Virus record (IMG/VR): IMGVR_UViG_3300030385_002649
Span: 62,001 to 126,000 of that record
Length of the DNA: 64,000 bases
Reading direction: 5' to 3' (one strand)
Made by a program: the position numbers and the translations under genes. The notes under the pieces were generated by a model. That model made no database searches, was not told the origin of the DNA, and saw only the letters and a list, made by a program, of their open reading frames with translations. Shown piece by piece: positions 1,068 through 14,662 of the stretch (its first letter is position 1; each line of letters starts with the position of its first letter).

Positions 1068-1349
1068 ATGAGAGACACAATGCAAGACCCAATCGTACGG
1101 TACACGTGCGATTGGTGTAAAAAGGTCGACTACGTTCGGAATCTTAAGGACGTCTATAAGAAAACCAGTCCAGAGACGTGGGTTCACAACAACGGGGAGG
1201 GGCCAGGAGAGGATTTCTGCTCCTCCGGGTGTCGATCACAGTCTGAAGTCGCCTGGGAGCAAGGAATAGACGCTGCTCTTAACGCTCAGACTGACAAATG
1301 GGAGACGATCCGAATAGCTAGCGCGCTGGAGCGTCGAGCCTTCAAATGA
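1068..1349 (+). CDS. small Zn-binding hypothetical (CDWC...CSSGC)
   Basis: GGAGGG RBS; paired Cys motifs; ATGA overlap with the next gene. Confidence 0.7.
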   Translation: MRDTMQDPIVRYTCDWCKKVDYVRNLKDVYKKTSPETWVHNNGEGPGEDFCSSGCRSQSEVAWEQGIDAALNAQTDKWETIRIASALERRAFK

Positions 1350-1567
1350 GCAACATGACTACTAATACAAAGACTGATATGCTTAAACTGTTACGACCTG
1401 ATTGGACCGAAGAGGATCTTGCAGTTCATGGCCCTAATTGTAGGTGCGGACATAGCATTTACAACCATGAGGGCGGTCAATGGCCTATGGAACAATGTTG
1501 TTATCTTGATTGCGATTGTATTACCAACGCTACGTGGTTATCAAGCACGATTAAATGGGAGGCTTAA
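1346..1567 (+). CDS. CxC/W-x-S microprotein family member (73 aa)
   Basis: CRCGHSIYNH...CCYLDCDC...WLSSTI; ATGA-coupled. Confidence 0.7.
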   Translation: MSNMTTNTKTDMLKLLRPDWTEEDLAVHGPNCRCGHSIYNHEGGQWPMEQCCYLDCDCITNATWLSSTIKWEA

Positions 1568-2903: not shown

Positions 2904-4061
2904 ATGAGTAACAACATGCAGGACCGGACGGTATCAACTCTCCGATCAGAAGGGCTGACCTTTGGCGAGCATTATGTCAAGCTAGGAGACGTGCTTTGTC
3001 GCAAGACTAAGGACTACAACGAAAAGGCCGGGGCAGGAAGTCGCAACAACCTCCTCAGTACCGCACTCGAATGGAGCAATAGCACTTTCTTCCCAAGCGG
3101 ACGATTCTGGCTCTCATTCTGTGCTAAAGTTGGAATTAGCCCGAGTGTTTTCAACCTTTTCACCCATGAGGAAGTGTTCAACCGTTGCCGAGATCGAAAC
3201 AAGGTCAGCGAGAGCGGCAATATCCGAATCGTAGAGGAAAAGAAGAGCAAAGACCTCCTAGCTATCAGCGATCCCAGCAAGGGCATTATTCATTGGGAGA
3301 ACGCCTATAAGATCGTGGAAGAGAAAAAGGGAACTGGAGTTTATTACAACGAAGGTGTTGTCTCTTCTCTTCACAGGCTCCAGAACGATACCCCGGTCCG
3401 AGTTGGGATTGAGGATTATGAGCCTCGGATTCAGGTCATGATTCCGATTGACGGTTATGGTTCCCCTACTGTCTATCTGGCTCTGGTCAGAAAGGCCAAC
3501 AACGCTGTGATCGTTGCTATGGGCAAGGCTTTCAAGTCTACGGTCAAGGTGTCTAAGAAGAAGAAAGCTGATCCGATTGAATTCTCTTTGGAGCGCATGT
3601 TCGATTCGTTCAGTAATGACGAGGGTTTCGACGCTCTAATCCGACGAATGGACGCTGCTCGCCACGCTCCTTTGTCAGTTCGGGAGTTTCATGAGATTCA
3701 GAAGATCTTGTCCAATCTCCCTAGGGATATTCGGGCTCAGAATGAGATTGATCGAATGATCCGTCCTGAGGTTCGGTTCTTCAACCGTCTAGCTGGCGAT
3801 CTTCACTTGAAGTATGGGCTTGCTCACCTTCAGGAAATGACTGAGAAGCAAATGGGCTTGCTGGAGACTGATATCTCTGTGTATGAGGCTTTCAACTTTA
3901 TCTCAGAATTGACCACTCACCACCTTGATTATCAGAACAATTCTGAGGCTAACGTTGCTGGAAAACTTCAGTCTTGGATTGGTCGTGTTTTGGCTCGTGC
4001 TTATGACCTTGAGGGCACGATCTCCCAGCCTAAGAAGAGCTACCTAGACCGTTACCTGTAA
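2904..4061 (+). CDS. DUF932/DUF945-like hypothetical protein (385 aa)
   Basis: LAISDPSK and PIDGYGSPTVYLALVR segments resemble, from memory, a DUF932-type family seen in planctomycetes; not searched. Confidence 0.5.
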   Translation: MSNNMQDRTVSTLRSEGLTFGEHYVKLGDVLCRKTKDYNEKAGAGSRNNLLSTALEWSNSTFFPSGRFWLSFCAKVGISPSVFNLFTHEEVFNRCRDRNKVSESGNIRIVEEKKSKDLLAISDPSKGIIHWENAYKIVEEKKGTGVYYNEGVVSSLHRLQNDTPVRVGIEDYEPRIQVMIPIDGYGSPTVYLALVRKANNAVIVAMGKAFKSTVKVSKKKKADPIEFSLERMFDSFSNDEGFDALIRRMDAARHAPLSVREFHEIQKILSNLPRDIRAQNEIDRMIRPEVRFFNRLAGDLHLKYGLAHLQEMTEKQMGLLETDISVYEAFNFISELTTHHLDYQNNSEANVAGKLQSWIGRVLARAYDLEGTISQPKKSYLDRYL

Positions 4062-4240
4062 TGGTTGATCTAAGCGAAGTTCCCTGGATTTGTAGGTGTA
4101 CCCATGAATGGGAGGATCACACCTACGACACTTCGCCTGGCTTTTGGGCTCCTCGGGGCTGTGAAGTTGAACACTGCATCTGTGACAACTGGCAACCCTG
4201 GCTTTCATGGCAAGTTTATTACGATTGGATTTCGAGATGA
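4061..4240 (+). CDS. CxC/W-x-S microprotein (59 aa), not in ORF track
   Basis: MVDLSEVPWICRCTHEWEDHTYDTSPGFWAPRGCEVEHCICDNWQPWLSWQVYYDWISR*; TAATG overlap upstream, ATGA overlap downstream. Confidence 0.75.
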   Translation: MVDLSEVPWICRCTHEWEDHTYDTSPGFWAPRGCEVEHCICDNWQPWLSWQVYYDWISR

Positions 4241-6172: not shown

Positions 6173-7462
6173 ATGAGCACAGTAACAGAACAACACATGC
6201 TAATCTTCACAGATATCGACAATAACAATAACAAGTTTTGGGAGGGCGTCTTAAAGGATGACAACACTCTTACTTGTCGATGGGGACGGGTTGGAGAACG
6301 AGGACAAAGCCGCGATTTCTCCGGAGGAGCCAAGAAATTGGCAGCCAAGTTGCGTGAGAAAAAGCGCAAGGGCTATGAAGAGGCCATGATCCTTAAAGAG
6401 ACCGGCCCTGCAGTTAGTGTTGGGAAGAGCCGACTTAAAAAGGTCGCGGCCAAGCAGATTGATCACGGATCGTGCGCGGAAACATCAACTCTCATTGAAT
6501 TCCTGGTTAAAGTCAACCGACACCAAATTTCTGCTGCCTCTGGTGGTAAGATTTTCATCGATGACGACGACGGGCTGATCAGAACTCCTCTTGGGGTTGT
6601 CAACCAGGAAGCTATCGATGCTGCTCGGATCTTCCTCACGGACATTGGCGATTGCGTCCAAGTTAAGTCCTACACTACTAAAAAATGGAAGGAAGCGGTC
6701 AACAAGTTCACTAGGCTTATCCCCCAGGACGTCGGTCGTGGTAGGGGGTGGGATAAGAAACTCTTCCCTAACATCTCGGCTGTTCGAAAGCAGAATGATT
6801 TGTTGGATTCGCTGCAGACCACTCTCACTCACGTCTTGGATAACCCTGCCAAGACTAAAGCTGATGCGAAGGAGGAAGATGTCTTCAAGGTTAAGCTTGT
6901 CCCGTTGACTGATGATAAAGTTCTTTCTCACATTAGGAGCTTCTATTATAAGAGTGTGAAGAAGATGCACTCTAGTTATGGGATGAAAATCAGCCGAGCA
7001 TGGGTCGTGGACATCGAGACGATGCGTAAAAAGTACGAAACTGATGGGGCGGGGCTGAGCAACGTCTGGGAGCTTTGGCACGGTACAAAGGCTTCGAACG
7101 TCCTCTCCATCTTAAAGGGTGGCCTGGTTATTCCCCCATCAACAGCAGGTCACGTATGTGGTCGGATGTTCGGCGATGGTCTTTACTTCTCTGACCAGAG
7201 CACGAAGTCTTTGAACTATGCTACTGGTTATTGGGACGGGTCGTCGGAGGAACGTTGTTTCATGTTCATGTCGGACGTGGCGATGGGCGAGACTTACGTT
7301 CCTAAGTCGACCTATTGGGGTCAATCTAACACTAAGAGTTGTCCTAAGGGCTATGATAGCACGTTCGCTAAGGCTAACGTTTCTGGCGTTCAGAATAACG
7401 AAATGATCGTTTATAGGACTTCTCAGGCTAACTTGAGATTTCTCGTTGAATTCGTCCGTTAA
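6173..7462 (+). CDS. poly(ADP-ribose) polymerase-like protein (WGR + regulatory + catalytic)
   Basis: WGR domain (CRWGRVGERGQ...EKKRKGY), helical regulatory region, catalytic LWHGT, MFGDGLYFSDQSTKSLNY, NNEMIVY. Confidence 0.93.
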   Translation: MSTVTEQHMLIFTDIDNNNNKFWEGVLKDDNTLTCRWGRVGERGQSRDFSGGAKKLAAKLREKKRKGYEEAMILKETGPAVSVGKSRLKKVAAKQIDHGSCAETSTLIEFLVKVNRHQISAASGGKIFIDDDDGLIRTPLGVVNQEAIDAARIFLTDIGDCVQVKSYTTKKWKEAVNKFTRLIPQDVGRGRGWDKKLFPNISAVRKQNDLLDSLQTTLTHVLDNPAKTKADAKEEDVFKVKLVPLTDDKVLSHIRSFYYKSVKKMHSSYGMKISRAWVVDIETMRKKYETDGAGLSNVWELWHGTKASNVLSILKGGLVIPPSTAGHVCGRMFGDGLYFSDQSTKSLNYATGYWDGSSEERCFMFMSDVAMGETYVPKSTYWGQSNTKSCPKGYDSTFAKANVSGVQNNEMIVYRTSQANLRFLVEFVR

Positions 7463-7601
7463 GTGGAGATGCAAATGGTGTGGATACCCCTGGGAACACA
7501 TTAACTCAGACGTTACTTGGAAATGCTCGCCAGAAAATTGTTACAATTACAGAATTTGGTTCTCTTATAATGTGCAAATAGACAGGCCATTCCCGGTATG
7601 A
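7446..7601 (+). CDS. Cys/His microprotein, array 1 member A (51 aa, TTG start), not in ORF track
   Basis: MNSSVKWRCKWCGYPWEHINSDVTWKCSPENCYNYRIWFSYNVQIDRPFPV*; overlaps the PARP stop by 17 nt; ATGA overlap with the next ORF. Confidence 0.6.
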   Translation: MNSSVKWRCKWCGYPWEHINSDVTWKCSPENCYNYRIWFSYNVQIDRPFPV

Positions 7602-7753
7602 GCGCGTTTAATGATGCTTTTCAGGATTGTAAGTGTGGCACGGTTTGGCATCATTTCCACGTCGGGTTTCACTGCTGGCATAGTTACCAAATTCGAGCCT
7701 GGAGAATAGAACTTTATGAAGAAGACGCAGGAATTGTGATCGATGGCTTGTAA
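7598..7753 (+). CDS. Cys/His microprotein, array 1 member B (51 aa), not in ORF track
   Basis: MSAFNDAFQDCKCGTVWHHFHVGFHCWHSYQIRAWRIELYEEDAGIVIDGL*. Confidence 0.75.
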   Translation: MSAFNDAFQDCKCGTVWHHFHVGFHCWHSYQIRAWRIELYEEDAGIVIDGL

Positions 7754-7754
7754 T

Positions 7755-7889
7755 GTGATTGATAATTTTCCTTGTCGGTGCGGACCGGATCCTGATCATT
7801 TCCAAGAAAATTGCTGGTACAGCTACCAAATCAAGTTCTGGGAAGCACCGATCAAGGTTTACCCTTTAATTAGTGGGGAAAAGATCTGA
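7755..7889 (+). CDS. Cys/His microprotein, array 1 member C (44 aa, GTG start), not in ORF track
   Basis: MIDNFPCRCGPDPDHFQENCWYSYQIKFWEAPIKVYPLISGEKI*; TGATG overlap with 7889. Confidence 0.75.
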   Translation: MIDNFPCRCGPDPDHFQENCWYSYQIKFWEAPIKVYPLISGEKI

Positions 7890-8188
7890 TGGAGATAGGT
7901 ATTGACCTTTTCCCGTGTTCTAATCTTATTTCGGGGGACAAAGACATGCTGAAAGATGAAGTTCTCACGTTGTGCAGATGTAAGGAGGAAAGCATCACCC
8001 ATTGGGAAGAAAATTGCTGGTATAGTTATCAACTTCCCAGGTGGTCTAAGGGTGTTGTCCGGCACGATCATTTGAGGTGTGACTTCCCGGCGTGGGCTCG
8101 GCTGTTGGTTGAGGCTCGTGGTAGAGTTGAGGATCCTGCGATTGCGATGGACAAATTGTTGATGGAATTTGAAACTCATGGTTTGTAG
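7889..8188 (+). CDS. Cys/His microprotein, array 1 member D (99 aa)
   Basis: LCRCKEESITHWEENCWYSYQLPRW core plus a C-terminal helical extension. Confidence 0.75.
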   Translation: MEIGIDLFPCSNLISGDKDMLKDEVLTLCRCKEESITHWEENCWYSYQLPRWSKGVVRHDHLRCDFPAWARLLVEARGRVEDPAIAMDKLLMEFETHGL

Positions 8189-8324
8189 ATGCCATTATGA
8201 AGTGTCGATGGTCCATTGGGGGAAAACTTGTTGGATTTCTTATCGAATCCCTAGATATAGGAAGACCGTTAGATTGGATTATCCAACAATTCATCGGCTT
8301 AACAAAGTGAAGGACTTATTATGA
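8178..8324 (+). CDS. Cys/His microprotein, array 1 member E (48 aa), not in ORF track
   Basis: MVCRCHYEVSMVHWGKTCWISYRIPRYRKTVRLDYPTIHRLNKVKDLL*; 11-nt overlap with D. Confidence 0.72.
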   Translation: MVCRCHYEVSMVHWGKTCWISYRIPRYRKTVRLDYPTIHRLNKVKDLL

Positions 8325-8372
8325 AATTTTGCGTATTTTACTCTTTAAGAGTTCCAAAAACGAGGAGGAAAC

Positions 8373-8975
8373 ATGGCGGTTACTGCTAACAAGGAACAAT
8401 TTGTGCTCATCTACACGAGCAACAAGAATCACGACAACCTGGTTTACCAAGTCGACAACGTGCATCGTGGGGTGTACCACTTGCGCTGTGTCGAGACTAG
8501 TCGGGTTATCAAGGCTCATAAGAGCCGTATTAGGAAAGTTCTATCCGAGGAGGAAATGATGAACGGAACTGGCGTTATTGAAGATACCGAGGTTGTCAAC
8601 GAGTCGACGACCACGGACAACATCGAAGTGAAGGCTCTAGAGGAAACTGACGAGACAATCGAGGCGATCAAGCCAAAGGCTAAGGTCAAGAAGACTAAAG
8701 CCCAAGCTATCCCCTTCGACTTCGATCAGTTCAAGACCGATGGTTACGAGATTTGGGTTAAGTCCGATCTTGAGTTCGACATCGAGAATGTTAAGGTTGA
8801 CGCGATCTGCCTCATCTACCCGGATGAGGCCAGTTACGAGACTTTCAACATCTACAACGGTTCTCTCGGAAAGAAGGGGTCTCGCGGTCAGAACTATAAG
8901 TTCACCGAGAAGAACACCATCGAGAGGAAGCGTAAGCAGCTGGGCAAGAAGGGCTACACCCAACGTAGCAACTAA
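8373..8975 (+). CDS. hypothetical protein, possible degenerate C-terminal WGR-like domain
   Basis: Strong AGGAGG RBS. C-terminus GKKGSRGQNYKF...KRKQLGKKGY parallels the PARP WGR GRVGERGQSRDF...KLREKKRKGY. Confidence 0.7.
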   Translation: MAVTANKEQFVLIYTSNKNHDNLVYQVDNVHRGVYHLRCVETSRVIKAHKSRIRKVLSEEEMMNGTGVIEDTEVVNESTTTDNIEVKALEETDETIEAIKPKAKVKKTKAQAIPFDFDQFKTDGYEIWVKSDLEFDIENVKVDAICLIYPDEASYETFNIYNGSLGKKGSRGQNYKFTEKNTIERKRKQLGKKGYTQRSN

Positions 8976-8992
8976 TGACACCAGCCAAGTGT

Positions 8993-9027
8993 GGGCGCCC
9001 GGGAGGAACAAACCCTCCCGGGCGCCC
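8993..9027. repeat. perfect 14-bp GC-rich inverted repeat (hairpin), 7-nt loop, no U-tract
   Basis: GGGCGCCCGGGAGG-aacaaac-CCTCCCGGGCGCCC. Confidence 0.85.
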
Positions 9028-9031
9028 TCGT

Positions 9032-9133
9032 ATGCTTAGAAACCATAAAGGAAGGTCCTGGCACAGTTTCTGGGTCACCTTAAAAAGGAACATGGATGCG
9101 ATGTACGGCATCGTACGGGTTACGAACTTGTGA
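9032..9133 (+). CDS. possible degenerate W-x-S microprotein (33 aa)
   Basis: MLRNHKGRSWHSFWVTLKRNMDAMYGIVRVTNL*; WHSFWV resembles WYSFWI at 13748. Confidence 0.3.
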   Translation: MLRNHKGRSWHSFWVTLKRNMDAMYGIVRVTNL

Positions 9134-9212
9134 GAATCTCTGGACCAGTTATCGAATTTATTATCTAAAAAATAATTCTTTTGTAATTAGTGCCAGGTCT
9201 CGGCGATTATAA
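9096..9212 (+). CDS. possible degenerate W-x-S microprotein (38 aa)
   Basis: MRCTASYGLRTCENLWTSYRIYYLKNNSFVISARSRRL*; ENLWTSYRI resembles ENCWYSYQI; AAGGA upstream. Confidence 0.4.
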   Translation: MRCTASYGLRTCENLWTSYRIYYLKNNSFVISARSRRL

Positions 9213-9357
9213 ATTCGCAAGCTGTACCAGGACCATCTGTTTGTTCCTATCCCTCGTGATCCCATGGTAGTGATTCTCTAGGAAATTCGAAAACATCTTC
9301 AGAGTTCAAGAGTTCTCTGAAAACAGCGGATTTGGAAGAAATGAGGAGTAGACGCCA

Positions 9358-9588
9358 ATGACAATCATTTTTCTTTGTGCCGTCCTGTTGATTACAGGAT
9401 TTATTACGCACCGACTGTATCTTAAAAATATCAGTCGGTGGCGTATGAGTAAAGTTGAACAAGATAGCGCAGTGATCGGGTATCATTGGGCTCAAGTAGA
9501 ACTGGATTACCTATATGCTGATTGCACTACCGATGAGTTTAATCGTTGGAATCCTCATCTCACTACGATTGAAAGAAAGAGCCACTAG
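9358..9588 (+). CDS. small membrane protein (N-terminal TM)
   Basis: GAGGAG RBS; hydrophobic IIFLCAVLLITGFI. Confidence 0.6.
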   Translation: MTIIFLCAVLLITGFITHRLYLKNISRWRMSKVEQDSAVIGYHWAQVELDYLYADCTTDEFNRWNPHLTTIERKSH

Positions 9589-9675
9589 CGGCATTTTCGA
9601 GCGCATGATGCGCGATCCCAAATTACTAACCACCATTAAACAGCTTGACAAAGCGACAAAGCGATGGAGCGATAA

Positions 9676-10002
9676 ATGACTGAAACCATTGAACAAACCG
9701 GCACTGTAACCACCACAGACACGGACACCGAAACCCAAGGTAAGAGCGGCTACTATCCAAAGTGGGTCGTCATTTTCCACAATGACGATGGCACTGCCTA
9801 TGATTTCGTCGTCGGGGTTCTCGTCAAGTTCTTCAACAAAGCAATGAAAGACGCCCAGCAATTAGCCGAGGAAGTCCACAAGAACGGTCAAGGCGTTGCT
9901 GGGATTTTCCCTAAGGAACAAGCTGAATTCCGCTCCCATGAGACGATGAAACTCGCCCGAGAACACGGTTATCCCCTGCAACTCTCGGTTGAGCCTGAGT
10001 GA
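9676..10002 (+). CDS. clpS: ATP-dependent Clp protease adaptor ClpS
   Basis: WVVIFHNDD..YDFVVGVL..FF...EVHKNGQG...YPLQLSVEPE; N-degron pocket NDD/H retained. Confidence 0.92.
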   Translation: MTETIEQTGTVTTTDTDTETQGKSGYYPKWVVIFHNDDGTAYDFVVGVLVKFFNKAMKDAQQLAEEVHKNGQGVAGIFPKEQAEFRSHETMKLAREHGYPLQLSVEPE

Positions 10003-10004
10003 GA

Positions 10005-10172
10005 ATGAAGTTCTTATCGCCAGAATGGTGGAAAAACGATCCTTCCTCAACTTGTCGTTGTGGATCACCGCTGAGCATCAACTCAATTGCTACGTGTCCT
10101 TGTGGGTCTATAGCGTGGTTCTCGGCGGAAATACTTAGTGAGGTCAGGTTTTACAACCGATTGGTCCATTAA
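10005..10172 (+). CDS. CRCG/W-x-SA microprotein, array 2 member A (55 aa), not in ORF track
   Basis: MKFLSPEWWKNDPSSTCRCGSPLSINSIATCPCGSIAWFSAEILSEVRFYNRLVH*; 2 nt after the clpS stop; TAATG overlap with the next ORF. Confidence 0.78.
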   Translation: MKFLSPEWWKNDPSSTCRCGSPLSINSIATCPCGSIAWFSAEILSEVRFYNRLVH

Positions 10173-10381
10173 TGTCGTTGTTCGAAAAAGTGACGCATCA
10201 TGACATTGAAGAATGGTTCACTAACTGGAAAGACCCTGCTGAAATGTGCCGGTGTGGGTATAGTCTATATGATCATACTATGCAGAGTCATTTTCATGCT
10301 TGGTATTCCGCAGAAATACTTAGTGATGAACAGTTCAATGAAAATATGAGTGAAAATATGAACGCGAAATCGAACAAATGA
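10172..10381 (+). CDS. CRCG/W-x-SA microprotein, array 2 member B (69 aa)
   Basis: WKDPAEMCRCGYSLYDH...HAWYSAEILSDEQF. Confidence 0.78.
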   Translation: MSLFEKVTHHDIEEWFTNWKDPAEMCRCGYSLYDHTMQSHFHAWYSAEILSDEQFNENMSENMNAKSNK

Positions 10382-10590
10382 GCGACGCATGGAAACGGAC
10401 ATGGAAAGACCCAGCCAAAATTTGTAGATGCGGCAGCCTTGTGATGGTACCATGGCACAGACACAAACCGTGGATTTCTGCTATCATTTTAAGCGACATT
10501 CAATTCTACAAGATTTATGACATGAAAACGGTTAGGCTCAGAATAAATGAAACTCATCCCATCGATTATAAAAGACCTTCTAAAAGATAG
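10378..10590 (+). CDS. CRCG/W-x-SA microprotein, array 2 member C (70 aa)
   Basis: WKDPAKICRCGSLVMVPWHRHKPWISAIILSDIQFY; ATGA overlap. Confidence 0.78.
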   Translation: MSDAWKRTWKDPAKICRCGSLVMVPWHRHKPWISAIILSDIQFYKIYDMKTVRLRINETHPIDYKRPSKR

Positions 10591-10885
10591 CTGCGAGCTA
10601 GAGGTAGAGGTTCTAGACTGTGGGTGGGTTTCAGACTTGCTAACGCATCTATACGTTCCAGCGGCAGAAATGGACATTGAGATTAGCCTGAATGAAGGAC
10701 TTATCAATGTCCAAGCATGGGGCGACGACAGTGTTTATAATTGTAGAGTATTTGACCCTCACGACATAGAGTTCATAGACGATCTAAGAGAATACTTGAT
10801 TCCTATGTGCGAAAACCATGAAGTACACATGAGGTACCCAGATGAAAAAAGCGGAAATAATCCAGAAGCTAGTAAAACACCTTAA
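10547..10885 (+). CDS. hypothetical protein (112 aa)
   Basis: Fills the gap before ligA; weak resemblance to the 147..542 frame (IIKDLLKDSCELEV vs IIRGWLQETCPDLTV). Confidence 0.65.
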   Translation: MKLIPSIIKDLLKDSCELEVEVLDCGWVSDLLTHLYVPAAEMDIEISLNEGLINVQAWGDDSVYNCRVFDPHDIEFIDDLREYLIPMCENHEVHMRYPDEKSGNNPEASKTP

Positions 10886-12779
10886 CCGTTGCGACCTAGC
10901 CTATTACAACCAAACCCCACTCATCAGCGACCAAGACTACGACAAACTCCGAGACAAGCTAACCAGCCTAGACCCAAGCAACCCCTTCCTCGCAAAAGTT
11001 GGGGCTCCCGTCGTCACCACGGACGGACGAAGCAAGCACACACATAAATCGCTCATCGGGTCCCTTGCCAAGTGCAAGACCAAAGAAGAGTTCATGAAAT
11101 GGGCCGAGGGAAAGGGCCCCCTGTGCGTCAGCTACAAGTATGATGGCAGTACAGTAGTCGCCACCTACGAAAGCGGTACGCTGAAAACTCTAGCGACCCG
11201 TGGCGATGGCACCATCGGAGAAGATATCACGGACAATGCCGACCTGATAGGCTCAAAATCCAACACTTACCATTTCATCCCGAAGCAACTTACCTCCGAT
11301 TTTACCGGAGAAATCCGAGGCGAAGCTATCCTGCGTTTAGGTCGGTTTGAAGAGTTCTTCAAGCCCGCTGGTTACAAAAACGCCCGCAACGCCGCCAACG
11401 GAAAAGTCCGCGATATGAAGCGCGACGACCTGATCAAATGGTTGGAAGTGGTGTGGTTCGATATCATCCCCGAGGACCGTGATGTCAAGACTGAGGGAGA
11501 GAAATGGGCTCTCATCCAGGAACTTGTCAACGATGATCGCCCCACCACTAAGAGTCTCGCTATGGCTCAGATCCAGACTGACGCCGAGAAGGCATGGGAG
11601 ATCTTCGAGGAGGTCGGCAAGCTTAGGTCCGGCTTGGACTTTGAGATTGACGGTATAGTCGTCAAGGTAAACGATATTGATGACCAAGAGTCCTTCGGTG
11701 TCACTAGTAACCGGCCCAATGGGGCTATCGCTATCAAGTTCCCCTCTTTGGGAGCAGAAACCTTTTTGGAGAGTATCGAATGGAATCGTGGATTGACAGG
11801 GGTTTACGCCCCGACCGGGATCCTCAAGTCGGTAGATATCGGCGGAGTGACCATAGGAAGAGTCTCCCTGTGCGGCATGGACGAGATCCGCAGGTTGAAG
11901 ATCGCCCCAGGAGACAAGGTCTACATCACCCGGCGAAATGACGTCATCCCCAAGGTTGAATATGTCATCAATCGGACCCCACAGCCGGGGACCATCCGAA
12001 CTCCAGTTAAAGCACCTAAGACGTGTAATGAGTGTGACGCCGACCTGATCCAGAACGGATCCTACCTGATCTGCCGAAACCCGGACTGCCAGGGAGAGAT
12101 TTTCGGTAGTCTCATGACCTGGATTCAGCGTTTGAAGATTAAAGGGCTAGGGTCTTCAGTGCTCCGGTCCCTCATCGACGAGGGCGTCACGGACATCTGC
12201 AAGCTCTACGAAGCTCAAGAGGAAGTCTATGAAAAAGCAACAAGATCCTCAAAGCTTGCAGCTAAGCTCTACGCATCCGTGCAATCAACAACGGAAGTTA
12301 GACTTGGTACTTTCTTATCAGGGCTCTGTATACCGTCTCTCGGGGCTACAAACGGTACGCGGTTGGAAAAGCGATTTAATACGCTTGAAGCAGTTGTCGC
12401 AGCATCCGAAGAAGACCTGGAAGGAGTACCGGGCATCAAAACAAATGCTAAGAAAATCAGAGCAGGACTTGACGCTAAATCCGATCTAATCGAAGGATTA
12501 GCTAAGATCCTAACGATCAAGACTCTAGACACTAGTGGGCCTCTAGCTGGACACACTGTCTGTGTCACCGGGGATTTAACCGTCCCAAGGTCTAAGTTCC
12601 AAGATTGGATTAGGTCTCTAGGAGGGGAAGTTAAGTCGGGCGTCTCTAAGGACCTATCGTATCTTATAACTAACGCTCCTGCAAGCGGCACTTCTAAGAA
12701 CAAGAAAGCGGACAAGTATGGTGTCAGAAAGTGTACTGAAACGGATTTCTATAGTCTTATCGGGTCCTCGCCAGCCTAA
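10842..12779 (+). CDS. ligA: NAD-dependent DNA ligase
   Basis: KYDG adenylation motif, TRGDG, EIRGE, DGIVVK, AIKF, C4 Zn finger, HhH repeats, C-terminal BRCT (VCVTG...GGEVKSGVSKDLSYLI). Confidence 0.96.
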   Translation: MKKAEIIQKLVKHLNRCDLAYYNQTPLISDQDYDKLRDKLTSLDPSNPFLAKVGAPVVTTDGRSKHTHKSLIGSLAKCKTKEEFMKWAEGKGPLCVSYKYDGSTVVATYESGTLKTLATRGDGTIGEDITDNADLIGSKSNTYHFIPKQLTSDFTGEIRGEAILRLGRFEEFFKPAGYKNARNAANGKVRDMKRDDLIKWLEVVWFDIIPEDRDVKTEGEKWALIQELVNDDRPTTKSLAMAQIQTDAEKAWEIFEEVGKLRSGLDFEIDGIVVKVNDIDDQESFGVTSNRPNGAIAIKFPSLGAETFLESIEWNRGLTGVYAPTGILKSVDIGGVTIGRVSLCGMDEIRRLKIAPGDKVYITRRNDVIPKVEYVINRTPQPGTIRTPVKAPKTCNECDADLIQNGSYLICRNPDCQGEIFGSLMTWIQRLKIKGLGSSVLRSLIDEGVTDICKLYEAQEEVYEKATRSSKLAAKLYASVQSTTEVRLGTFLSGLCIPSLGATNGTRLEKRFNTLEAVVAASEEDLEGVPGIKTNAKKIRAGLDAKSDLIEGLAKILTIKTLDTSGPLAGHTVCVTGDLTVPRSKFQDWIRSLGGEVKSGVSKDLSYLITNAPASGTSKNKKADKYGVRKCTETDFYSLIGSSPA

Positions 12780-12824: not shown

Positions 12825-13748
12825 ATGGCCCTCGGATTATGCTGCCAATGGTTAGAAATCAAAAAAGGCAAACCAAAGAATGTGCTCATAAGCAGAAGTC
12901 TTCAATTGGGCCGTTTTAACAGAGGTGAATATAGTCGAGAAAAGATCAAGAAGACATTTATAGACAACCTTCAAAATGTCTTAGACGTTATGCCTAAGAT
13001 TGTAGCATCTGGGGTTCGTTCTCTACGCATTAGCAGTTCAATGTTTCCTCTTTTTGATAAAGTTGACAAAGAATTGGCTGAAAATAAAGAAACCGATTTG
13101 TTACTTGCTGAAATAGGTTCAATGGCATTAATCAATGGCGTTAGAATCACCACTCATCCCGCTCAGTTTACAGTTATTTCAAGCGATAACCCAAAAGTGG
13201 TTGATAATTCTATCCGAGAATTGGAGTATCACGCTTGGATGTTCGATAAAATGGGGCTTCCACAAACCCCTCATTATAGCATCAACATCCATGGAGGTAA
13301 AAGGGACCGAAAAACGCAATTGATATCAGGAATTGAACGTCTTAATGACTCAACTCGTCTCCGCTTAACCTTAGAGAATTGTGAATTTGCGTACAGTGTT
13401 AAAGATTTAGCGTTAGTTGCGAAGGACGTAAAAGTTCCCATTTGTTTTGATAGTCACCATCATCGATTTAACTCTTCGGACCTGTCTGGTGAAAAAGCCA
13501 TGGGTATAGCGATAAAAAGCTGGCCATCCGGCAGCAAACCCATGACCCATTTAAGCAATTCCAAACCAGAATATGTAGAAACTGATTCCGTCACTAAATT
13601 ACGAAAGCATAGTGATTATTTACATCAAGTTCCAGAATATCAATTAAAAGCTAACAACGATGGGTTGATTGATATAGAAATTGAAGCTAAAATGAAAAAC
13701 CTCGCCATCTTTAAAGCTGTAAATGATTTTGGTTTACAGCTTAATTAA
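12825..13748 (+). CDS. uvsE: UV-damage endonuclease (UvsE/UvdE)
   Basis: LGLCC, RISSSMFP, RITTHPAQF, NIHGG, LTLENCE, CFDSHHH, HSDY, IEIEAKMK. Confidence 0.93.
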   Translation: MALGLCCQWLEIKKGKPKNVLISRSLQLGRFNRGEYSREKIKKTFIDNLQNVLDVMPKIVASGVRSLRISSSMFPLFDKVDKELAENKETDLLLAEIGSMALINGVRITTHPAQFTVISSDNPKVVDNSIRELEYHAWMFDKMGLPQTPHYSINIHGGKRDRKTQLISGIERLNDSTRLRLTLENCEFAYSVKDLALVAKDVKVPICFDSHHHRFNSSDLSGEKAMGIAIKSWPSGSKPMTHLSNSKPEYVETDSVTKLRKHSDYLHQVPEYQLKANNDGLIDIEIEAKMKNLAIFKAVNDFGLQLN

Positions 13749-13906
13749 TGCAAAACTCTACAGTCTCATCGGGTCCTCGCCAGCCTGATAGGCGTAAAAG
13801 AGGCGAATCACCACCGCCGGGTTCAAGATGGTATTCATTTTGGATCCGCCGCAAAAGGAAAAGACTTCGAGATGGACCTATTCGACGATTGTTACTGGGG
13901 GAATAA
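13748..13906 (+). CDS. possible basic W-x-S microprotein (52 aa), not in ORF track
   Basis: MQNSTVSSGPRQPDRRKRGESPPPGSRWYSFWIRRKRKRLRDGPIRRLLLGE*; TAATG overlap with uvsE; lacks Cys. Confidence 0.45.
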   Translation: MQNSTVSSGPRQPDRRKRGESPPPGSRWYSFWIRRKRKRLRDGPIRRLLLGE

Positions 13907-14063
13907 ACAAAAACGCAAGGAATACTACAAGAAATATGTTGAAGGCTGGAAGACCAGACCGTGCTCGGCCTGTGCCGGATCTGGCCATTACGACAGGGGC
14001 GGAAGCCCAAAATGCCAAGGCTGTGAACCGCCAGGGTCTGGAAAAGAAAGATATAAGCCATGA
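13872..14063 (+). CDS. small DnaJ-type Zn-finger protein
   Basis: CSACAGSG...CQGC..PGSG; ATGA overlap with 14060. Confidence 0.65.
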   Translation: MDLFDDCYWGNKQKRKEYYKKYVEGWKTRPCSACAGSGHYDRGGSPKCQGCEPPGSGKERYKP

Positions 14064-14662
14064 AGCTTAAAGCTGCCTTGAAAAGCGAACAAAACCTCAA
14101 GTGCGCAATTTGCAAAGACAATGACGATGGTCTTATGCTATGCGCTAAGTGCAACACTGTTCAGCACGCTTCATGCATGATCGAATTTAAAGGCTGTTCT
14201 GGCTGTGGAAATAGCGACCCTCATGCCGAGAAGCCTGCCAAAAAGAAAACAGAAACCAAAACGAGCAGTGCTCACACTTTGTCTAGACAGGATTCAGGTG
14301 TGCTCTGCGACCCCTCATTCGGTTATTGTCATTATCCAATGGGAACGCAACATTTTTGTCCATACCACAGAATTACGACGACCGATGATTATCAAGTTCC
14401 TAAAAGGAATGATGGGCCGCACGGATCACACAGACCGTGTCGGTCTTGTGGTCCCCACACTTATTCTCCTGGCGACATGCAGTCTAAAAGAACACACGGT
14501 TGCTGCTGTTGCTCCTGTTGGCGTTATAGGTCCTCAGAAGAACGAGACCGAGTCATGCCAGAGATGGAGATATCTGGCATGTTTGTTAATGCCGCTAAGC
14601 TATTCGTTTTTTCACTAATAGTTTTCTCTCTTGCGGACCTCCTTGTGGCGTTAAGTATCTAA
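14060..14662 (+). CDS. prokaryotic RING-like finger protein with C-terminal TM helix
   Basis: CAIC...LMLCAKCNTVQHASCMIEFKGCSGC fits the Prok-RING_1 pattern; extra Cys/His clusters; hydrophobic C-terminus. Confidence 0.6.
   Translation: MKLKAALKSEQNLKCAICKDNDDGLMLCAKCNTVQHASCMIEFKGCSGCGNSDPHAEKPAKKKTETKTSSAHTLSRQDSGVLCDPSFGYCHYPMGTQHFCPYHRITTTDDYQVPKRNDGPHGSHRPCRSCGPHTYSPGDMQSKRTHGCCCCSCWRYRSSEERDRVMPEMEISGMFVNAAKLFVFSLIVFSLADLLVALSI

What the first reader, a model, noticed from the sequence alone, without database searches (positions are those of the whole stretch)
10005..10590. Second tandem array: three CRCG/W-x-SA-x-ILS microproteins coupled behind clpS
Seen: WWKNDPSSTCRCG...WFSAEILSEVRFY, WKDPAEMCRCG...WYSAEILSDEQF and WKDPAKICRCG...WISAIILSDIQFY, joined by TAATG and ATGA overlaps; the first is absent from the track. 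This subfamily differs from array 1 (W-K-D-P prefix, SAxILS suffix), implying independent local duplication. Inference: each array may be co-regulated with, or modulate, the effector gene it follows.
Basis: partly seen in the sequence, partly recalled or inferred. Interest (0 to 1): 0.72.

Follow-up and report, generated by a model that had tools for sequence, protein, structure and literature searches.

The report
Expanded zinc microprotein family, jumbo phage
The three tiny genes behind clpS are real, and they are one small branch of a previously undescribed family of about 58 zinc-binding-type microproteins (36-99 residues) in a 371-kb marine jumbo phage, an unusually large gene expansion for a phage whose function is still unknown.

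Summary
Three overlapping ORFs (10005-10172, 10172-10381, 10378-10590) follow clpS and are significantly alike (BLASTP E 4e-12 to 3e-8).

The window is part of a 370,804-bp marine (Tara) jumbo phage. A profile built from the window's copies finds 58 ORFs of the same family in this genome, against 0 in reversed or shuffled controls. About 41 of them lie in one 12.4-kb array.

- **Core motif:** C-R-C ... H ... (C/H) ... W-x-S, followed by a helix, with at least 4 Cys/His per core.
- **Selection acts on the protein:** the conserved Arg uses all six Arg codons, and the invariant Ser uses both TCN and AGY. Synonymous divergence between paralogs is saturated, yet the ORFs are intact.
- **No known family matches:** Pfam, PHROGs, NCBIfam, PADLOC, PDB and the fold searches all gave nothing.
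- **Rare elsewhere:** 1.84 billion representative proteins gave only about 17 outside relatives, all on tiny metagenome contigs, several of which also hold tandem copies.

A specific link to ClpS is not supported: neighbours of family members are diverse, and the co-fold gave no verdict.

Most likely these are Zn-stabilised binding microproteins of the phage's accessory (host-takeover) repertoire. The closest analogue is the roughly 35-copy Zn-ribbon expansion of Bacillus phage G, which is not homologous.

The parts
10005..10172 (+). a2_1: 55-aa family member (alternative GTG start at 9999). Four-Cys core of CRC plus CPC, then W-F-S-A-E-I-L-S. No gene caller called it.
10172..10381 (+). a2_2: 69-aa family member. 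Core of CRC plus H, then H-F-H, then W-Y-S-A-E-I-L-S and an acidic helical tail. TAATG overlap with a2_1.
   Evidence: (AF2 helix 45-67, pLDDT 68.8)
10378..10590 (+). a2_3: 70-aa family member. Core of CRC plus H-R-H, then W-I-S-A-I-I-L-S and a basic tail. ATGA overlap with a2_2; its last 44 nt overlap the next ORF.
9676..10002 (+). Phage clpS (108 aa), immediately upstream. Its start overlaps the preceding small ORF (ATGA).
   Evidence: PF02617, E 1.3e-23; phrog_27368
7446..8324 (+). Array 1: five overlapping family members (7446-7601, 7598-7753, 7743-7889, 7889-8188, 8178-8324), mostly the short C-R-C...H...C-W-x-S-Y form. It lies directly after the PARP-like gene.
1346..1567 (+). Single long-form family member (CRCGH...H...C-x-C...W-L-S), upstream of a ResIII/DEAD helicase gene.
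4061..4240 (+). Single long-form family member. Its start overlaps the stop of the 385-aa ORF at 2904-4061.
9096..9212 (+). Possible decayed family copy (C...C...L-W-T-S-Y-R-I) in the gap upstream of the clpS operon.
   Evidence: (E 0.48, iteration 0): weak
6173..7462 (+). PARP-like gene (WGR + PARP regulatory + PARP catalytic domains) preceding array 1. Context only.
10547..12779 (+). Downstream genes of the same tightly packed unit: a 112-aa ORF (10547-10885) and the NAD-dependent DNA ligase (10842-12779). The ORF overlaps a2_3 by 44 nt, and the ligase overlaps the ORF by 44 nt.

Best explanation
The three ORFs are translated genes for 55-70-residue microproteins of a new family.

**Architecture of a member**
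- a variable N-terminal leader;
- a Cys/His knuckle that most likely chelates zinc. The short form has 4 ligands (CCHC, CCHH or CCCC). The long form has 7-8 ligands (C-R-C-G-H-x4-H...C-x2-3-C-x-C), possibly for two metal ions;
- an invariant W-x-S that starts a C-terminal helix whose sequence differs from copy to copy.

**Origin.** The family expanded by old tandem duplications to about 58 copies in this 371-kb marine phage. Array 2 is one local triplication with its own prefix and suffix.

**Expression.** The three are probably made from the same polycistronic message as clpS, the 112-aa ORF and the NAD ligase. None has an SD-like motif upstream, and their starts overlap or abut the preceding stop, so translation is probably by termination-reinitiation.

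**Function (inferred, not shown).** The conserved knuckle is a scaffold and the variable leader and helix are the binding surface. Each paralog would bind a different host or phage macromolecule, protein or nucleic acid. The family would then be part of the phage's accessory, host-takeover or counter-defence repertoire rather than a ClpS-specific partner.

**Rough odds**
- real, translated proteins: about 0.9;
- metal-binding knuckle: about 0.75;
- diversified binding modules for host takeover: about 0.4.
For: **The family is real**
- An iterative profile search of all six-frame ORFs of the genome gives 58 ORFs at E<1e-3, against 0 in reversed and 0 in shuffled ORFs. The regex C[RK]C...W.S hits 58 real ORFs against 3 and 0.

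**Selection acts on the protein**
- The conserved Arg (Lys in 3 of 50 curated copies) uses all six Arg codons.
- The invariant Ser uses TCN in 23 copies and AGY in 27.
- The best paralog pairs are only about 50% identical. dS is saturated or at least 0.8, and dN is 0.3-0.6. The ORFs nevertheless remain open.
- The annotated frame has the best codon-usage score in 38 of 50 copies, where about 8 would be expected by chance.

**Zinc**
- Cys+His make up 24% of the core against 4% outside it.
- After discounting cores that the script cut at the wrong W-x-S, every copy keeps at least 4 ligands, in two discrete classes.
- Cys is enriched 6-fold, Trp 3.9-fold and His 2.5-fold over the phage's long ORFs.

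**C-terminal helix**
- AF2 models show it starting at W-x-S.

**Coupling**
- Overlaps of 1 to 29 nt (one of 50) are the rule in the arrays.
- SD-like motifs precede 54% of long ORFs but only 32% of family ORFs, and none of the three.

**Conservation elsewhere**
- About 17 outside relatives exist.
- Tiny metagenome contigs hold 2-4 tandem copies each.
- A single-copy relative occurs in five JGI contigs beside a small terminase gene.
- A two-module relative lies among small genes between an ERF/YqaJ recombination module and the portal gene of a 39-kb phage contig.

**Context**
- Members lie among accessory enzymes: PARP-like, ClpS, Macro, HDAC-like, helicase, ligases and peptidase genes.
Against: - There is no expression data. 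Only the source sample holds this DNA, and no RNA run was found.
- The structure models are of middling confidence (pLDDT 68.8 and 64.7), and no fold match was found. Zinc binding is inferred from the residue pattern alone.
- Nothing identifies a target.
- pI ranges from 4.3 to 11.4, so no single class of ligand is implied.
- Some copies are broken or lack a start codon, so not every copy need be functional.
- a2_1 has only the second-best codon score among its six frames.
Confidence: 0.6

Rival explanations
1. ClpS-linked function. The three microproteins would be cofactors, anti-adaptors or substrates of the phage ClpS and would tune delivery of proteins to the host ClpAP.
For: - They lie immediately downstream of clpS with coupled start codons, probably in the same operon.
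- Array 2 has subfamily-specific N- and C-terminal motifs that could reflect a specialised partner.
- The genome has no ClpP of its own, so the ClpS must act on host machinery.
Against: - 55 of 58 family members are nowhere near clpS, and their neighbours are diverse.
- The N-termini (MK.., MS.., MS..) are not L/F/Y/W N-degrons (established knowledge of ClpS).
- The co-fold of ClpS with a2_1 gave no verdict (score 0.00). This is neither support nor refutation.
Confidence: 0.07
2. Nucleic-acid-binding zinc knuckles. The family would be a set of small DNA- or RNA-binding regulators or structural proteins, as was proposed for the Zn-ribbon expansion of Bacillus phage G.
For: - The short form is a CCHC-type knuckle, with a conserved Arg between the first two Cys and an invariant Trp after the last ligand.
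- Median pI is about 9.
- The tails are enriched in Arg (12% against 5%) and Trp (4.9% against 1.3%).
- Precedent: PMC7824862 proposes a transcription-factor or DNA-binding role for about 35 Zn-ribbon copies in phage G.
Against: - Eleven of 50 copies are acidic (pI below 6), including a2_2 at pI 4.9.
- There is no match to any DNA- or RNA-binding family or fold.
- The ligand spacing differs from retroviral-type knuckles.
Confidence: 0.25
3. RiPP precursor peptides. The arrays would be short Cys-rich peptides with variable regions that an enzyme modifies after translation, as with the prochlorosins of marine cyanobacteria.
For: - Many short, tandem, Cys/Ser-rich ORFs combine a conserved part with hypervariable parts.
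- The setting is marine.
Against: - No radical-SAM or YcaO homolog is present in the genome.
- A LanC search also found nothing, but its control rang in no genome, so that result is uninformative.
- The conserved residues form Cys/His metal-ligand patterns rather than a leader with a cleavage site.
- Length and charge vary widely between copies.
Confidence: 0.03
4. The ORFs are not functional genes. They would be chance ORFs, a DNA-level repeat, or decaying pieces of a former multi-domain protein.
For: - They are very short, often overlapping and mostly missed by gene callers.
- A few copies are frameshifted, truncated or lack a start codon.
- Multi-module relatives exist elsewhere, with 4 modules in P0008 and 2 in P0010.
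Against: - Decoy searches give 0 hits against 58.
- Nucleotide identity between copies is about 50%, with synonymous and six-fold codon variation at the conserved residues.
- The ORFs have stayed open although dS is saturated.
- Codon usage favours the annotated frame.
- Homologous arrays occur in other samples.
Confidence: 0.04

Closest known systems
Lineage-specific expansion (about 35 copies) of a Zn-ribbon protein in Bacillus phage G, e.g. gp32 / YP_009015343.1 (Iyer et al. 2021, PMC7824862)
   Same: - A jumbo phage carries dozens of paralogs of a small zinc-binding protein of unknown function.
- That paper called the expansion 'unprecedented' and suggested transcription factors or structural DNA-binding proteins.
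   Different: - The two are not homologous. The family profile finds nothing in the 497.5-kb phage G record at E<=1, and hhalign against gp32 gives probability 0.24%.
- gp32 is a 117-aa classical C-x2-C...C-x3-C ribbon.
- Here the proteins are 36-99 aa with a C-x-C first ligand pair and an invariant W-x-S.
- There are more copies here (about 58), and they are packed with overlapping reading frames.
Zn module C-x-C-G-H-x4-H...C-x2-C-x-C in uncharacterised phage and cellular proteins (P0008, P0010, P0023, P0028, P0031; weak matches to phrog_24688 and Pfam FAM221)
   Same: - The N-terminal ligand pattern matches the long-form members.
- They were found by the family profile at E 1.6e-7 to 7.6e-4.
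- P0010 lies among small genes between an ERF/YqaJ recombination module and the portal gene of a 39-kb phage contig.
   Different: - These proteins carry 2-4 modules in one chain and lack the W-x-S helix that is invariant here.
- None has a known function.
- The FAM221 matches are below Pfam's cut-off (best 19.5 bits against 25).
SWIM zinc finger (C-x-C-xn-C-x-H)
   Same: - The first ligand pair is C-x-C and the second pair is also spaced by one residue (H-x-H or C-x-C in array 2), followed by a helix.
- This resemblance is recalled from knowledge of the motif, so it is a lead only.
   Different: - No Pfam SWIM match appears even at E<=1.
- The second pair is not C-x-H.
- The invariant R, W and S are not SWIM features.
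Multigene families of large DNA viruses that evolve by tandem duplication (for example in poxviruses, ASFV and giant viruses)
   Same: - Tandem arrays of diverged paralogs sit in accessory parts of a large viral genome, usually tied to host interaction.
- This comparison rests on established knowledge, not on a test here.
   Different: - Those are viruses of eukaryotes, with unrelated and much larger proteins.
- Here the units are microproteins in a tailed phage, and no recent duplicates are present.

Membership tests
ClpS (PF02617), for the upstream gene | Match to the ClpS profile above Pfam's gathering score | tested here: met
   83 bits against a cut-off of 23, E 1.3e-23, covering profile positions 4-79 of 80
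The new C-R-C...W-x-S microprotein family (defined here) | C-[RK]-C, at least two further Cys/His, then W-x-S; significant match to the in-genome profile | tested here: met
   In the final iteration a2_1 scores E 7.7e-10, a2_2 2.7e-13 and a2_3 5.8e-8. C, C, W and S are invariant in 49 and in 52 aligned sequences.
Any curated family (Pfam, PHROGs, NCBIfam, PADLOC) | Profile match at or above the curated cut-off, or E<=1e-3 | tested here: not met
   The three ORFs have no hit better than E 0.054. Across 52 family sequences the most frequent Pfam hit is FAM221 (6 sequences, best E 0.0064, below the cut-off). PADLOC and NCBIfam give single chance-level hits.
SWIM zinc finger | C-x-C-xn-C-x-H signature and a Pfam SWIM match | tested here: not met
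   No SWIM hit at E<=1. The second ligand pair is C-x-C, H-x-H or a single C before W.
Retroviral-type CCHC zinc knuckle | C-x2-C-x4-H-x4-C spacing | tested here: not met
   The short form here is C-x-C-x(6-9)-H-x(3-6)-C. No Pfam zf-CCHC hit.
Phage G Zn-ribbon expansion (gp32-like) | Sequence or profile similarity to gp32 / YP_009015343.1 | tested here: not met
   No match in the phage G record at E<=1. hhalign probability is 0.24%.
RiPP precursor array | A cognate maturase gene in the genome, plus a conserved leader with a cleavage site | tested here: not met
   No Radical_SAM or YcaO match in the 370-kb genome. The LanC search was uninformative because its control rang nowhere. No leader-like conserved N-terminus.
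Zinc-binding protein (generic) | Stoichiometric metal bound by four Cys/His ligands | not testable with these tools
   Only the residue pattern supports it. The models have pLDDT 65-69 and their coordinates cannot be inspected.

The most novel reading that the evidence does not exclude
The roughly 58 paralogs would be a standing 'library' of zinc-scaffolded inhibitor or adaptor microproteins. Each would be tuned to a different host factor or defence protein, so that one jumbo phage carries a combinatorial counter-defence or host-range toolkit.

A further possibility is that they work with the neighbouring ADP-ribose enzymes. A PARP-like gene precedes array 1, a Macro gene follows the large array, and an HDAC-like gene sits inside it. 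The microproteins could then be targeting subunits or substrates for those enzymes.
Probability: 0.2. Interest if true: 0.85.

Novelty: new variant of a known kind. Interest (0 to 1): 0.62.

Why it matters
Microproteins are the least annotated part of phage genomes. Here gene callers missed a2_1 and four of the five array-1 genes.

This family makes up about 58 ORFs and roughly 2.4% of a 371-kb genome, counted over 50 curated copies. That is larger than the roughly 35-copy Zn-ribbon expansion in phage G, which was called unprecedented in 2021.

Every copy has stayed open through saturating synonymous divergence, so dozens of distinct small binding modules appear to be maintained by selection.

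If they target host proteins or defences, they would be a compact source of new inhibitors and of a new metal-binding mini-fold. They would also show that phages, like large eukaryotic viruses, build multigene families for host interaction.

The work also gives a practical lesson: six-frame profile searches are needed to see such families at all.

Tried and rejected
**ClpS co-fold**
- The ClpS + a2_1 co-fold scored 0.00, with partner pLDDT 37-38. This is no verdict and is not evidence either way.

**Structure**
- AF2 of a2_2 and of a canonical member gave only pLDDT 68.8 and 64.7.
- Fold searches found nothing usable: Foldseek PDB (best E 4.9), VIA-align over 48,161 chains (no Z>=2), BFVD (best E 2.3) and AFDB clusters (best E 0.21, an unnamed 66-aa protein).
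- A PDB sequence profile search gave 0 hits at E<=10.
- ESM Atlas returned only unnamed viral clusters at chance-prone scores.

**Search for relatives**
- The word-index protein search found almost only the genome's own proteins.
- A virion structural protein found only relatives at 28-33% identity.
- megablast and tblastn against 50,697 GenBank phages found nothing.
- Degenerate DNA patterns in IMG/VR gave 0, 3 and 8 matches. None was confirmed by the profile, and the two that were translated looked like chance or out-of-frame matches.
- The one metagenome scan recovered mainly the same phage (Tara scaffolds), plus one single-copy relative.

**Expression and regulation**
- No RNA run holds the sequence.
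- Promoter and terminator scans were at chance level.
- No Rfam match was found.

**Literature**
- Searches found no description of this family.

**Phylogeny**
- The tree of 50 members is poorly resolved. Array 1 is not a clade in the best tree, but its monophyly is not rejected (p-AU 0.29).

Full report
**1. The observation**

The three ORFs are present exactly as described. a2_1 runs 10005-10172 from an ATG; a GTG at 9999 would overlap the clpS stop. a2_2 runs 10172-10381 and a2_3 runs 10378-10590. The TAATG junction (10170-10174) and the ATGA junction (10378-10381) are real.

The gene ending at 10002 is a ClpS (PF02617, E 1.3e-23).

Pairwise BLASTP gives E 4e-12, 3e-10 and 3e-8. Weak nucleotide repeats remain over the two shared motifs. 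a2_1 reads W-K-N-D-P rather than W-K-D-P.

a2_1 is in no public gene-call set, whereas a2_2 and a2_3 are. Logan's own assembly of two runs of the same sample, which may be the window's source, reproduces 7300-10800 without a single difference.

**2. Where the window lies**

The window is bases 62001-126000 of a 370,804-bp IMG/VR virus record. Its 46-bp terminal repeat is just the overlap of a circular assembly. The DNA comes from a marine (Tara) sample.

Tail-fibre and virion PHROGs mark it as a tailed jumbo phage, and its structural proteins resemble those of cyanophages only distantly. It has no close relative in GenBank phages or in IMG/VR.

**3. The three ORFs are a small part of a very large family**

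A profile seeded with the eight copies in the window was iterated over all six-frame ORFs of the genome. It converged on 58 ORFs at E<1e-3. Reversed and shuffled ORF sets gave none.

- **Location:** 41 lie in one 12.4-kb array on the minus strand (genome 332.3-344.7 kb). Three are isolated.
- **Size and charge:** median length of 50 curated copies is 56 aa, and median pI is about 9 with a range of 4.3-11.4.
- **Invariant residues:** the two Cys of C-R-C, and the Trp and Ser of W-x-S. The Arg and one His are nearly invariant.
- **Two classes of core**:
  - A short form, C-R-C-x(6-9)-H-x(3-6)-C-W-x-S, has four ligands.
  - A long form, C-R-C-G-H-x4-H...C-x2-3-C-x-C-x4-5-W-x-S, has seven or eight.
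- **Array 2:** it belongs with the four-ligand class but places its second pair differently, as C-P-C, H-F-H or H-R-H two to four residues before the Trp.
- **Composition:** Cys+His make up 24% of the core and 4% of the rest. Cys, Trp and His are enriched 6-, 3.9- and 2.5-fold over the phage's long ORFs.

**4. They are protein-coding and under selection**

- The conserved Arg (Lys in 3 of 50 curated copies) is encoded by all six Arg codons.
- The invariant Ser is encoded by TCN in 23 copies and by AGY in 27. DNA-level conservation cannot explain this.
- The closest paralogs share only about 50% of residues and 50-60% of bases. dS is saturated or at least 0.8, with dN 0.3-0.6. There are no recent duplicates, yet the frames stay open.
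- Codon usage favours the annotated frame in 38 of 50 copies. It is the best frame for a2_2 and a2_3 and the second best for a2_1.
- Successive copies usually overlap by 1-29 nt.
- SD-like motifs are rarer upstream of family ORFs (32%) than of long ORFs (54%), and none precedes the three ORFs here. This fits translational coupling.
- A few copies in the large array are frameshifted, truncated or lack a start codon, so there is some gene death.

**5. Outside this genome**

A profile search of 1.84 billion representative proteins gave only 31 hits at E<=1e-3. About 14 of these are the genome's own proteins.

The true outside relatives, those with the W-x-S, come from metagenome contigs under 1.3 kb. 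Six-frame scanning of those contigs shows tandem copies there too: four in 535 bp of L006, and two each in L007, L012 and L013.

One metagenome scan added a single-copy relative, present in five JGI contigs beside a small terminase gene. More distant proteins carry two to four copies of the N-terminal ligand module without the W-x-S. One of these (P0010) lies among small genes between an ERF/YqaJ recombination module and the portal gene of a 39-kb phage contig.

GenBank phages hold nothing detectable. Because gene callers miss most copies, protein databases must understate the family's spread.

**6. Comparison with known families and folds**

- No hit in Pfam, PHROGs, NCBIfam or PADLOC reaches significance. 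The only recurrent weak Pfam match is FAM221, itself uncharacterised and below its cut-off.
- No PDB sequence matches.
- AF2 with the paralog alignments gives pLDDT 68.8 for a2_2 and 64.7 for a canonical member. In both, a helix starts at W-x-S.
- Fold searches in PDB, BFVD and AFDB, and an exhaustive VIA-align run, gave nothing.

**7.

The local-duplication part stands. The three share a prefix and a suffix found in no other copy. They group together in both trees, though with uneven support: SH-aLRT 86 in the quick tree, and 26/0 for the trio but 96/93 for a2_1+a2_3 in the careful tree. Array 1 is not resolved as one clade, but its monophyly is not rejected (p-AU 0.29).

The functional link to the preceding 'effector' is not supported. 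Most copies neighbour each other. The others sit beside a helicase, a PARP-like gene, ClpS, a DUF2201 peptidase, an AAA ATPase, an HTH protein, a Macro gene and an HDAC-like gene. The ClpS + a2_1 co-fold gave no verdict. The genome has no ClpP.

**8. Most likely mechanism**

- **Shown:** a real, selected, multi-copy family with a Cys/His core, arranged in overlapping arrays.
- **Inferred:**
  - The core binds zinc and, with the Trp, anchors a C-terminal helix.
  - The variable leader and helix provide specificity.
  - The copies act as small binding modules on different host or phage targets, as part of the accessory repertoire that fills this genome region.
  - The three ORFs here are co-translated with clpS by coupling.
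- **Rivals:**
  - A nucleic-acid-binding role is the main rival. In its favour are the conserved Arg and invariant Trp, a basic majority and Arg/Trp-rich tails. Against it are the acidic copies such as a2_2.
  - A RiPP-precursor reading is disfavoured, because no radical-SAM or YcaO enzyme is present. The LanC search was uninformative.

**9. Closest known case and novelty**

Iyer et al. (PMC7824862) describe an 'unprecedented' expansion of about 35 Zn-ribbon copies in Bacillus phage G, and proposed transcription factors or DNA-binding proteins. That family is not homologous. The profile finds nothing in the phage G genome. gp32 is a classical C-x2-C ribbon of 117 aa. hhalign gives probability 0.24%.

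The present case is therefore a new family and a larger, more compact example of a rare phenomenon. I rate it a new variant of a known kind, and interesting mainly for the size of the expansion, the undescribed motif and the fact that annotation misses it.

Noticed in passing
window 12748-12777 and 13757-13786: A 30-nt direct repeat (93% identical) brackets the UV endonuclease gene uvdE (12825-13748). These are the only two copies in the 370-kb genome, and the first is the 3' end of the NAD-ligase gene. It looks like the scar of a uvdE cassette insertion.
   Followed up: partly
genome 331447-332064 (-), 336572-337483 (-); window 6173-7462 (+): There is an ADP-ribose/NAD theme around the arrays. 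A PARP-like gene (WGR + regulatory + catalytic domains) precedes array 1. A Macro-domain gene lies directly downstream of the 41-copy array. A histone-deacetylase-family gene sits inside that array. An NAD-dependent ligase follows array 2.
   Followed up: partly
genome 332270-344654 (-), locus L002: A 12.4-kb array holds about 41 family ORFs. Some copies are broken: 341612-341773 with 341622-341717 is frameshifted, and 341819-341992 is truncated. Two copies have no ATG, GTG or TTG start (343094-343306 and 340098-340313). One copy is fused to a 125-aa C-terminal extension with no Pfam match (332270-860).
   Followed up: partly
window 9096-9212 (+): A 38-aa ORF with C...C...L-W-T-S-Y-R-I lies in the 380-nt gap upstream of the clpS operon. 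It may be a decayed family copy (E 0.48 only).
   Followed up: no
window 9358-9588 and 9515-9679 (+): Two overlapping small ORFs (76 and 54 aa), each with a hydrophobic N-terminal stretch, precede clpS. The second ends in an ATGA overlap with the clpS start. Neither has a family match.
   Followed up: no
window 10547-10590 and 10842-10885: Two successive gene overlaps of exactly 44 nt: a2_3 with the 112-aa ORF, and that ORF with the NAD ligase.
   Followed up: no
window 7446-8324 and 10005-10172: Public gene calls lack a2_1 and four of the five array-1 ORFs. External contig L006 has four family copies but only one called gene.
   Followed up: yes
loci L028, L029, L031, L033, L036: An identical 54-codon open frame (48 aa from its first Met) with the long-form motif and W-T-S-F-I-L occurs as a single copy in five JGI metagenome contigs. 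In L033 it lies near a small terminase gene and a DUF6876 gene.
   Followed up: partly
window 14060-14662 and 1068-1349 (+): Other small Cys-rich ORFs give weak zinc-finger matches: PHD / prokaryotic RING at E 1e-3, and zf-FCS at E 2e-3, all below the Pfam cut-offs.
   Followed up: no
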